Below, in pieces: positions 54,783 through 57,215 of a DNA stretch of 64,000 nt; within the stretch, counting starts at the first letter, position 1, and each line of letters begins with the position of its first letter. The notes beneath the pieces are model-generated. The model saw only the letters and a list, made by a program, of their open reading frames with translations, was not told where the DNA came from and made no database searches. A program made the position numbers and the translations under genes. Origin of the DNA: Glycera tridactyla (lineage: Eukaryota); contig OZ286462.1 of assembly GCA_965644265.1 (NCBI GenBank), forward strand, positions 89,962,001 through 90,026,000, in the 5' to 3' direction.

Positions 54783-54841
54783 AGCTTTCTTCTGATCGGC
54801 CTCGGTGATGATGTCACCGATACACTGCTCGCTAACCTCTG
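54783..54841 (-). CDS. PHKA: PHKA alternative exon X3 (AEVSEQCIGDIITEADQKKA)
   Basis: CTAG acceptor with U-rich tract, GTAAGT donor, 59 nt phase 1-0; paralogous to X2. Confidence 0.7.
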
Positions 54842-55479
54842 CTAGACGTACAAGTGACACAGATAACAACAGAAAGAAACAATGAGCACAACGACAACGA
54901 CTACAGCCATGGCTTGCCAAGCTTCTTACATTAGGGACACTGCTGCATGGAGATCTACAAACTCTGAAAAAAGTAGTCTTCACGACCCAGCCATGCCTCA
55001 CATCACCTTCAAATTACTTCACTACCCATAAGTTCTAGAAATTCATTCATCCGTTCATAGTTCGGAACTGATTTCGGAGATTATGATGATTGATTTCATG
55101 GATGACCTTCTCAGAGCATCATACTCTTGTTCAGCACTATACCAACACAAGTATTGAACTCAAAAATTTGCAGATTCGACATTGAGCGACCTATTCGTTC
55201 CTTTGAACCAGGGTTCCCCATTGGTTGCTGAGAATCCATCCAATAACTTCCAAATATGAAATAGTGACTTGAACAATTGGAGGGTCCCTGATCTGTGAAG
55301 AAAAAAGATATTGGGTTATTTTCAAATTTCAATTGATGATTGAAGACTAGATGATTGGTCGAAACCCATGCAATACTGCTCATACTGAAGCTCAGTCTAA
55401 AGCAAAATCCACACAATTGCCATGTAAGGATGGACTGGTACAGCACTCATATGTGAGAAAGATTGCACTCATGGCAGTG

Positions 55480-56150
55480 TGAATGGACTGGATTCAAAAT
55501 GGGTGTGACTCATTGTTAACACATGAGCTAGCAGTCATGTCTATGGGTATGGACTGGATTTGAAATGTGTGTGACTCAGAAGTAAACACATAAACTAGTA
55601 GTCATGTCTGTAAGACTGGACTGTATTTGAAATGGGTGTGACATGTGTAAACACATAGCTAGCAGTCATATCTGTGTGACTGGACTGTACTGTATCTAAA
55701 ATAGGTATCACATATGTAAACACATTTGAGCAAGGAGTCATGACCGTGAGTGGACTGTGTCTAAAATAGGTGTGACATATGTAAACACAGGTCTTGTCTG
55801 TGACTGGACTGTAAACACATTTAAGCTAGCAGTCATGACTGTGACTGGATTGGATTTGAAATGGGTGTGACATATGTTACACATAACCAAGCAGTCATGA
55901 CTGTGACTGGACTGTATCTAAAATGGGTGTGCCATATGTTACACATAAGCTCGCAGTACTGTCTGTGCGATTGGACTGGATTCAAAATGGGTGTGACTCA
56001 TATTTAAACACATAAGCCAGCAGTGATATCTGTGTGCCAAGATTAGATTTGAGTGGGTGTGATTCACATAGGGACATAAGCTAAGCTAGCAGTCATGTCT
56101 GTGTGACTAGACTGTATTTGAGTGGGTGTGACTCACAGAAACATATAAGC
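55480..56150. repeat. ~60-63-bp minisatellite
   Basis: GACTGGACTGTATTTGAAATGGGTGTGACATATGTAAACACATAAGCTAGCAGTCATGTCTGT-like units, ~11 copies. Confidence 0.9.
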
Positions 56151-56462
56151 TACAAGCCAAAGGATATTTTGATGAATGCCTCTGTGAACAATGAGTAGCA
56201 TCCTAAAGTTGGTGATGTGAGTGGCCGAGAACCTAGAGCCTGGTGGAAAGTGAAGACTGCTTCACCCCCCGGTTTACAAAACAAGTGACCAATCACATCT
56301 GACTTGAATGAGCACTCATTGGGTAAACACGGGTGAGATTTGAACTTCATACTCTAACATATGGACTGAGTACAATCTAGAAGCAGAATCTAAAAGACAA
56401 ACAGAAAAAAATGTATAAGTGCATTCTTGATGAGTCCTGACTTGGTTGACCTGGGCACTTAC

Positions 56463-56524
56463 AGTTTTCTTTGTATCAGCTCCGGTTATGACATCACCGA
56501 CCGAGAAATAGATTGAGTCTGTAT
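56463..56524 (-). CDS. PHKA: PHKA alternative exon X2 (DTDSIYFSVGDVITGADTKKT)
   Basis: TTTCAG acceptor, GTAAGT donor, 62 nt phase 1-0; paralogous to X3. Confidence 0.7.
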
Positions 56525-57090
56525 CTGAAATTGAACAGATTCATCAGAACAGAGATCCACCAAAGCAAAGAGATAGCTTCCTCACAGACAAACTTCTCCA
56601 GATTCCATGACATGACGCCAAACTTTATCTCCACTCAGCGGAGTAAAAACACACAGATTTCCCTCAGTAAGCTGTACTAACTATATTTTCCAATTGCCAT
56701 GTAACTGAAATAGACAACCGCACATTGAAATATTAAGTATGAGGAATGTTCACGCAACGGGAGATGCTTAGAATGAAATTGAGTTTAAAATTAAATATGG
56801 GGAACCTGTCAACATATGCCAGTTATTTTTTGACAGTGAATGATGTTGGCACATCTTACAGCTGATTTTTGTCAGGGAAAATTTGAATCCCAAGCATCAG
56901 ATTGAATTTATTGTCATGGAATTTGCAGAAGTTTAACTGAAGGTGGTTGACTGCTGAGTACTGCTTCTGGATTCATCTGGTCCTTTTTCACAGTAACACG
57001 ATTCCCATGTGAGCAACCTACAATGAAATCATAATCTGAGATTAACTGTAACAAAGATGAGAGTATACAAGTAAAAAATGAGGAGCAGAC

Positions 57091-57215
57091 CTTGATCTCT
57101 TGTCTGAATTTGTCAAAACTGACGGTGCTGAGGCGGCTGACGGCTCGGCTTGGCGGCGCGGAAGACCGCAGCGTGAAAATGGAGAGCTGCGCATCGTCGT
57201 CATATATACTGCCAC
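57091..57215 (-). CDS. PHKA: PHKA exon X1 (GGSIYDDDAQLSIFTLRSSAPPSRAVSRLSTVSFDKFRQEIK)
   Basis: CTAG acceptor phase 1 continues ..VSSG; GC-rich coding-like; RQEIK matches vertebrate RSEMK; donor AAG|GTCTGC, 125 nt phase 1-0. Confidence 0.72.

What the first reader, a model, noticed from the sequence alone, without database searches (positions are those of the whole stretch)
54783..57215. Mutually exclusive, tandemly duplicated exons in phosphorylase kinase alpha
Seen: three exons after the phase-1 KEFGVSSG exon all start in phase 1 and end in phase 0, so they cannot be chained in frame; X2 and X3 are clear paralogues ([V/I]GD[V/I]IT[G/E]AD[T/Q]KK[T/A], both with GTAAGT donors). Established: this is the multi-phosphorylation region, and vertebrates use separate PHKA1/PHKA2 genes plus cassette splicing. 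Inference: one invertebrate gene generates tissue-specific regulatory isoforms through a mutually exclusive exon cluster, which I do not recall being described.
Basis: partly seen in the sequence, partly recalled or inferred. Interest (0 to 1): 0.72.

Follow-up and report, generated by a model that had tools for sequence, protein, structure and literature searches.

The report
Either/or exons in worm phosphorylase-kinase alpha
An annelid-like phosphorylase kinase alpha gene carries one long and two short alternative exons for its phosphorylation loop, only one of which keeps the reading frame; this is a familiar kind of splicing switch at a spot already known for alternative splicing in vertebrates.

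Summary
On the minus strand, after the phase-1 KEFGVSS exon (donor at 63308), lie three exon candidates: X1 57215-57091 (125 nt), X2 56524-56463 (62 nt) and X3 54841/54838-54783 (59/56 nt). All are 2 mod 3. The next conserved exon (41884-41714) starts in phase 0. Only single inclusion stays open; skipping or any double inclusion gives a stop.

X2 and X3 are the only two copies of a VGD[IV]IT..KK motif in the window. Five related genomic contigs show the same layout with one X1-type and one X2/3-type exon, always 2 mod 3. Differences in the core fall on third codon positions (28/18/91), so both exon types are real coding exons. The X2/X3 duplication was seen only in this genome among those sampled.

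RNA-like contigs show X1 spliced at exactly the predicted borders. X2 is seen only unspliced.

No junction to the flanking exons could be read. One contig border suggests X3 was joined to an exon ending [A/T]AG (X1 or a 28-nt linker), not to the KEFGVSS exon. Strict mutual exclusivity is therefore inferred, not shown.

The scan noted other either/or exon clusters in this genome, but not this one. It is a new member of a known kind, of moderate interest.

The parts
63308..63446 (-). Upstream constitutive exon (..[15 protein letters not shown]), ending in phase 1. Its acceptor was not fixed (the conserved part runs from about 63410). A masked N run, 62953-63282, begins 25 nt after its donor and was not examined.
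   Evidence: (human PHKA1 938-970)
57091..57215 (-). X1: long alternative exon, 125 nt, phase 1 to 0. It is Ser/Arg/Pro-rich, ends in FDKFRQEIK, and has a weak donor (gtctgc). It is the orthologue of the exon that follows KEFGVE in vertebrates and of the insect segment.
   Evidence: (run X3 record 18: spliced at both predicted borders)
57018..57045 (-). 28-nt candidate linker, or the end of a long form of X1 that would use a poor donor at 57018. Phase 0 to 1. Not conserved in relatives. It is one of two 5' partners compatible with the X3 contig border.
56463..56524 (-). X2: short alternative exon, 62 nt, phase 1 to 0, core VGDVITGADTKKT, donor gtaagt. It is closest to the single short exon of the relatives.
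   Evidence: RNA seen only unspliced (record 17)
54783..54841 (-). X3: second copy of the short exon, core IGDIITEADQKKA, donor gtaagt. Its tandem acceptor tagcag gives an exon of 59 nt (from 54841) or 56 nt (from 54838, the homologous site and the one used in a contig).
   Evidence: (run X1 record 1; coverage in all three runs)
41714..41884 (-). Downstream constitutive exon ([23 protein letters not shown]..), starting in phase 0. It begins the KPBB_C / calmodulin-binding region.
56585..56939 (-). Long-range stem inside the X1-X2 intron (arms 56939-56912 and 56612-56585, about 30 bp, -37.6 kcal/mol). Unique in the window; role unknown.

Best explanation
This is the 3' part of a phosphorylase kinase alpha-subunit gene of a probable annelid. 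The loop between the KEFGVSS exon and the GQWLRRRR calmodulin-binding exon corresponds to the vertebrate multiphosphorylation segment. It is encoded by alternative exons: a long, Ser/Arg/Pro-rich exon (X1, 42 residues counting the split codon) or a short acidic-hydrophobic exon with a VGD[IV]IT..KK core (X2 or X3, about 20 residues).

Every one of these exons is 2 mod 3, between a phase-1 donor and a phase-0 acceptor. Only an mRNA with exactly one of them is translatable. Skipping all of them, or including two or three, creates a premature stop and is presumably removed by nonsense-mediated decay.

The long-or-short choice is old, being shared by at least five related genomes. The short exon was duplicated in tandem in this lineage, giving up to three isoforms, or four with the NAGNAG acceptor of X3.

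Shown: exon borders, phases, coding conservation, splicing of X1 at both borders, and use of the X3 acceptor. Inferred: exclusive use, decay of double-inclusion products, and that the swap exchanges a phosphorylatable regulatory loop for one without such sites.
For: - Phases and lengths.
- Only single inclusion stays open, in the window and in L001, L003 and L011.
- The same layout occurs in L001, L003, L010+L013, L011/L012 and L017. X1-type lengths are 119, 137, 134, 122 and 125 nt; X2/3-type lengths are 59, 59, 56, 53 and 59 nt. All are 2 mod 3.
- Pairwise differences in the short-exon core by codon position are 28/18/91.
- These exons are the only conserved blocks between the flanking exons.
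- RNA contigs: record 18 has X1 with unlike sequence at both predicted borders, and the two extra matching bases fit the ..TCAG end of the upstream exon. Record 1 leaves the genome at the X3 acceptor. The X3 bin is covered in all three runs, without coverage of the bin just downstream in two of them.
- Gene identity and position of the loop.
Against: - No junction from the KEFGVSS exon to X2 or X3, or from X2 or X3 to the 41884 exon, was read.
- The X3 contig aligns to 54840, not 54841. That fits a 5' partner ending [A/T]AG (X1 or the 28-nt linker), not the ..CAG end of the KEFGVSS exon, so X1 and X3 may occur on one RNA.
- X2 was seen only unspliced.
- The runs are small, of uncertain type, and contain intronic contigs.
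- The masked run 62953-63282 could hide something.
- No transcript-derived protein of this clade was found.
Confidence: 0.6

Rival explanations
1. X1 is constitutive, and X2 or X3 is an optional add-on. X1 would connect to the short exon through the 28-nt segment 57045-57018, either as a separate micro-exon or as a long form of X1 using the donor at 57018. This restores phase 1, so the protein carries both loops.
For: X1+linker+X2/X3 and X1-long+X2/X3 are all open. The frame stays open for 58 codons past the X1 donor. The linker ends ..GTAG, which fits the border of the X3 contig at 54840. Run X1 has coverage extending past the X1 donor (table 2).
Against: The linker and the donor at 57018 (gttgct) are poor and are not conserved in any relative. 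L003 has a stop 11 codons after the X1 donor and no usable phase-1 donor. Record 18 shows the normal X1 donor in use. The encoded segment looks like a translated polypyrimidine tract.
Confidence: 0.15
2. X2 and X3 act mainly as frame-breaking 'poison' exons. Included after X1, they introduce a stop and lower the amount of productive alpha-subunit mRNA.
For: X1+X2 and X1+X3 give stops. The X3 contig border fits X1 as the 5' partner, and the same contig still holds the downstream intron.
Against: The short exon evolves codon by codon in the phase-1 frame, with third-position bias and indels in threes. It keeps a conserved peptide core in six genomes. That is expected only if it is translated after the phase-1 upstream exon.
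Confidence: 0.12
3. Only one of the two short exons works; the other is a decaying duplicate. The gene would then make two isoforms, as in the relatives.
For: Relatives have a single copy. X2 has no spliced RNA support. The 5' half of X3 is diverged.
Against: Both keep AG/GT sites, gtaagt donors, an open frame and the conserved core. Differences between X2 and X3 in the core are mostly synonymous or conservative. X3, the more diverged copy, is the one seen in RNA.
Confidence: 0.13

Closest known systems
Differential mRNA processing in the multiphosphorylation domain of vertebrate PHKA1/PHKA2 (Wullrich et al. 1993, J Biol Chem 268:23208, cited as ref. 28 in PMC11950179; details from my own knowledge)
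   Same: Same gene family and the same loop, between KEFGV(E/S) and GQW.RRRR. It is a flexible, phosphorylated segment next to the calmodulin-binding region and is a known hotspot of alternative splicing.
   Different: Vertebrates use cassette exons and two paralogous genes. Here one gene offers a frame-locked choice among a long exon and two short exons. The paper itself could not be read here.
Mutually exclusive homologous exons 26/27 of the human PHKB gene (recalled from memory: Wullrich-Schmoll and Kilimann 1996; not verified here)
   Same: A paralogous regulatory subunit of the same enzyme uses tandemly duplicated, mutually exclusive exons.
   Different: It is a different subunit and a different region. 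No paper in the library linked PHKB to this.
Tandem-duplicated mutually exclusive exon clusters in invertebrate genes (surveyed in PMC3228551)
   Same: X2 and X3 have similar length, the same phase, sequence homology and adjacent position. Reading-frame incompatibility acts as the safeguard.
   Different: The older choice, X1-type against X2/3-type, is between non-homologous exons of different length. That resembles the Drosophila phosphorylase kinase gamma case, which the paper names as the exception.
Docking-site/selector RNA competition (Dscam, 14-3-3 zeta type)
   Same: There is a strong long-range intronic stem next to an alternative exon.
   Different: Both arms lie in one intron, and no second selector near X3 pairs with either arm above the shuffled background. 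This is not the same mechanism.

Membership tests
Phosphorylase kinase alpha subunit (PHKA) | C-terminal KPBB_C domain | tested here: met
   Pfam PF19292 matches exons 41231-40962 (E 1.1e-12) and 41884-41714 (E 1.2e-07), both above the cut-off.
Phosphorylase kinase alpha subunit (PHKA) | Closer to alpha than to the paralogous beta subunit | tested here: met
   PDB 8jfk alpha chain E 1.4e-26 (95.6 bits) against beta chain E 3.6e-07 (33.6 bits). The upstream exon hits only alpha.
Phosphorylase kinase alpha subunit (PHKA) | Variable, Ser-rich loop between KEFGV and the GQW.RRRR calmodulin-binding segment | tested here: met
   The flanking exons align to human residues 938-970 and 1082-1167, and the loop lies between them. 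The segment is described in PMC11950179.
Phosphorylase kinase alpha subunit (PHKA) | N-terminal glucoamylase-like (GH15) domain | tested here: inconclusive
   Only the last part of that region lies in the window. The Glyco_hydro_15 match is E 0.0012, below the cut-off.
Mutually exclusive exon cluster | Adjacent internal exons with the same start and end phase | tested here: met
   X1, X2 and X3 all go from phase 1 to phase 0; the same holds in five relatives.
Mutually exclusive exon cluster | Sequence homology and similar length between the alternative exons | tested here: inconclusive
   Met for X2 against X3. Not met for X1 against X2/X3: 125 against about 60 nt, with no significant similarity.
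Mutually exclusive exon cluster | Joint inclusion or joint skipping is non-productive | tested here: met
   All skip, double and triple combinations give stops in the window and in L001, L003 and L011.
Mutually exclusive exon cluster | Mature mRNAs contain exactly one of the exons | tested here: inconclusive
   X1 is spliced on both sides and the X3 acceptor is used. The partners could not be read, one border hints at X1 or the linker joined to X3, and X2 is unspliced only.
Docking/selector RNA-competition system | One docking site complementary to a selector next to each alternative exon | tested here: not met
   There is a single stem within the X1-X2 intron. Pairing of either arm near X3, X1 or downstream of X2 is within the range of shuffles.
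Poison (unproductive) exon | Conserved as RNA, not as a peptide; inclusion always gives a stop | tested here: not met
   Third-position bias is 28/18/91 and indels come in threes. Inclusion alone gives an open frame.

The most novel reading that the evidence does not exclude
The exon choice is an old annelid switch between a phosphorylation-sensitive and a phosphorylation-blind form of phosphorylase kinase, made from one gene. It would do by splicing what vertebrates do partly with PHKA1/PHKA2 and cassette exons. The lineage-specific X2/X3 duplication would add a third regulatory flavour. A still bolder variant is that X3 joined to X1 is read in the other frame (RLASS..SSPRP..RRK) and yields a truncated alpha subunit lacking the calmodulin-binding tail.
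Probability: 0.3. Interest if true: 0.5.

Novelty: new member of a known kind. Interest (0 to 1): 0.37.

Why it matters
Phosphorylase kinase integrates hormonal, calcium and metabolic signals, and the alpha-subunit loop concerned is where most of its regulatory phosphates go. Here an invertebrate lineage replaces the whole loop by alternative splicing and has kept that choice across several genomes. This gives a natural pair of enzymes with and without the loop. It also supports the view that this segment is a recurrent target for isoform diversification. For annotation, automated gene models that chain X1 with X2 or X3, or skip them, will be frame-shifted. It does not change any general principle of splicing.

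Tried and rejected
- Looking for transcripts or annotated isoforms. The representative search with the upstream exon and the word searches with X1 (no candidate) and the downstream exon returned only genomic ORF fragments that read into introns. No spliced product of this clade turned up.
- Sequencing runs. Only three small runs of uncertain type hold parts of the stretch. The single read-laying run included a hugely abundant repeat at 57919-58312, which flooded the joint and loose-end tables. The letters beyond the X1 and X3 borders were therefore not shown.
With either acceptor (48051 or 48041) it gives stops or the wrong exit phase, and it is not conserved. Rejected.
- X3 read in frame 0 after X1, as a protein kinase A (PKA)-like site. 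The same frame has stops in X2 and in the relatives' short exons. Rejected as the conserved reading.
- A conserved linker exon or conserved intronic element between X1 and the short exon. None was found.
- Docking/selector pairing. None was found beyond one intra-intronic stem.
- Literature. No paper in the library links PHKA with mutually exclusive exons. The 1993 paper on the vertebrate hotspot is not held. Accession-number searches for the relatives' source organisms found nothing, so 'annelid' rests on earlier notes of this scan.
- Joined exon models were translated only inside local scripts to test frames.

Full report
**What is there**

The window holds the 3' part of a gene on the minus strand. 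Its exons at 63999-63793, 63446-63308, 41884-41714, 41231-40962 and 40510-40370 match phosphorylase kinase alpha subunits of insects, vertebrates and other animals. They carry the KPBB_C domain. They match the alpha chain of the human enzyme far better than the beta chain: E 1.4e-26 against 3.6e-07.

The exon ending at 63308 aligns to human PHKA1 residues 938-970, and the exon at 41231 aligns to 1082-1167. The DNA between them therefore encodes the counterpart of the multiphosphorylation segment. That segment is a flexible loop of about 80 residues next to the calmodulin-binding region (PMC11950179).

**The observation**

The upstream exon ends ..TCAG|gt with one base of a split codon. Three candidates follow, each with an AG acceptor and a GT donor:
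- X1, 57215-57091, 125 nt.
- X2, 56524-56463, 62 nt.
- X3, 54841-54783, 59 nt.

Each is 2 mod 3, so it runs from phase 1 to phase 0. The next conserved exon starts tag|ACGGTG at 41884 in phase 0.

A local translation test shows that X1, X2 or X3 alone gives an open frame into that exon. Skipping all three, or any double or triple inclusion, gives a stop.

X2 and X3 are each other's only match in the 64-kb window: 8 of 12 residues identical in the core, with DNA similarity confined to the 3' half and the gtaagt donor.

**Are they real exons?**

I fetched related genomic contigs through fragments found with the upstream and downstream exons. Five of them show the same order: a phase-1 upstream exon, an X1-type exon ending in ..KFRQ[DE]IK (KFRMDIK in L011), one short exon with a VG[DE][ILV]IT core, and a phase-0 downstream exon. 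These are L001, L003, L010 with L013 (one contig), L011 (the same place as L012) and L017.

- X1-type lengths are 119, 137, 134, 122 and 125 nt.
- Short-exon lengths are 59, 59, 56, 53 and 59 nt.
- All are 2 mod 3, so every length change was a multiple of three.

In the nine-codon core of the short exon, pairwise differences fall 28, 18 and 91 on codon positions 1, 2 and 3. Between the flanking exons these two exon types are the only conserved blocks. In L001, L003 and L011 single inclusion is open, and skipping or double inclusion gives stops.

A more distant contig, L002, has the X1-type exon but no detectable short exon. L007 shows neither. No relative has two short exons, including the 9.7 kb between the short exon and the downstream exon in L013. 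The X2/X3 duplication is thus peculiar to this genome among those sampled.

**RNA evidence**

Only three small runs of one study hold parts of the stretch, and their type is a guess. Laid on 52600-58500 they gave the following:
- A 187-nt contig (run X3, record 18) matches 57091-57217 with 30 unlike letters on each side. X1 is therefore spliced at exactly the predicted donor and acceptor. The two extra matching bases fit the ..AG end of the upstream exon, and the next exon does not begin with G, as expected for the 41884 exon.
- A 147-nt contig (run X1, record 1) matches 54722-54840 and then leaves the genome for 28 letters. X3's acceptor region is therefore used while the long downstream intron is still present.
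- The bin holding X3 is covered in all three runs. In two of them the bin just downstream is empty.
- X2 is covered only by a 151-nt contig that runs on into its downstream intron.

The alignment with the relatives shows that the homologous acceptor of X3 is cag|, giving exon 54838-54783 (56 nt).

With that acceptor, a partner ending ..CAG, as the KEFGVSS exon does, should have extended the match to 54841. The match stops at 54840. That fits a partner ending AAG (X1) or TAG (the 28-nt segment 57045-57018). The letters themselves were not shown, because an extremely abundant repeat at 57919-58312 filled the tables.

This is one low-depth contig and a one-base argument. Even so, it means double inclusion, or an in-frame X1-linker-X3 form, cannot be excluded. 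The linker and its donor are poor and are not conserved.

**How it most likely works**

One of the alternative exons is chosen per transcript, and the reading frame acts as the safeguard. The X1-type exon has weak donors in all species (gtctgc, gtggtc, gtgcta, gtggct, gtgctg, gtgcac). The short exons have gtaagt or gtaaga donors. That pattern suits regulated competition.

I found no docking/selector system. The one strong stem, -37.6 kcal/mol, has both arms in the X1-X2 intron. Neither arm pairs near X3 above the shuffled background.

Functionally, X1 encodes a Ser/Arg/Pro-rich loop with R-x-x-S/T motifs. Its end resembles the ..LKSEIK end of the vertebrate exon seen in the fetched vertebrate fragments. 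The short exons encode an acidic-hydrophobic loop without such motifs. I infer, without any test, that the choice yields enzymes with different sensitivity to phosphorylation.

**Comparison and novelty**

That this loop is a hotspot of alternative mRNA processing in vertebrates is established (reference 28 of PMC11950179). Tandem-duplicated, frame-locked exon clusters are common in invertebrates (PMC3228551). I found no paper describing such a cluster in a PHKA gene.

Earlier notes of this scan list other either/or exon clusters in the same, probably annelid, genome, but none at this gene. I file it as a new member of a known kind. It has a conserved two-way choice between non-homologous exons, plus a recent duplication of one of them.

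**Limits**

- Joined exon models were only translated in local scripts and were not sent to search or folding tools.
- The organisms behind the related contigs are unknown.

Noticed in passing
window 56585-56612 and 56912-56939: A strong inverted repeat lies inside the X1-X2 intron: about 30 bp, -37.6 kcal/mol, unique in the window, and present in the intron's minimum-energy fold. Relatives L001, L010 and L011 also have long inverted repeats in the matching intron, at other positions. It could be the ends of a small transposon or a splicing-related stem.
   Followed up: partly
window 57919-58312: A repeat with a 17-nt tandem unit and nested inverted repeats lies in the intron upstream of X1. 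It reaches summed contig depths of 67,000-100,000 in all three runs, with many variants and rearranged joints. It is a very abundant, probably transcribed, dispersed element.
   Followed up: no
window 55465-56152: An array of about 62-69-nt tandem repeats (roughly ten copies, 78-83% matches within each sub-array) fills much of the X2-X3 intron. It may be linked to the duplication that made X3.
   Followed up: no
window 57090-56917; L010 16616-; L001 5210-; L011 10544-: The reading frame stays open for 58, 47, 64 and 76 codons past the X1-type donor in four of six genomes, and for 10-11 codons in the other two. No conserved alternative donor was found. This may be chance or an intron-retention tail.
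   Followed up: partly
window 54839-54844 and L001 6816-6821: A tandem tagcag acceptor (NAGNAG) stands in front of the short exon, both in the window (X3) and in L001. It would add or remove one residue.
   Followed up: partly
window 145-13796, + strand: A short peptide word (FSKGDIV) recurs eleven times, about 1-2 kb apart. This indicates a tandem array of repeated coding units upstream of the glutamate-receptor gene noted by others.
   Followed up: no
L003 8752-8761: The downstream exon of L003 is preceded by ttg, whereas the window and contigs L001, L011 and L017 have an AG acceptor (tag or cag). This is probably a long-read assembly error or a variant.
   Followed up: no
window 62953-63282: A masked N run begins 25 nt after the donor of the KEFGVSS exon. 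Relatives show no conserved exon at the matching place.
   Followed up: no
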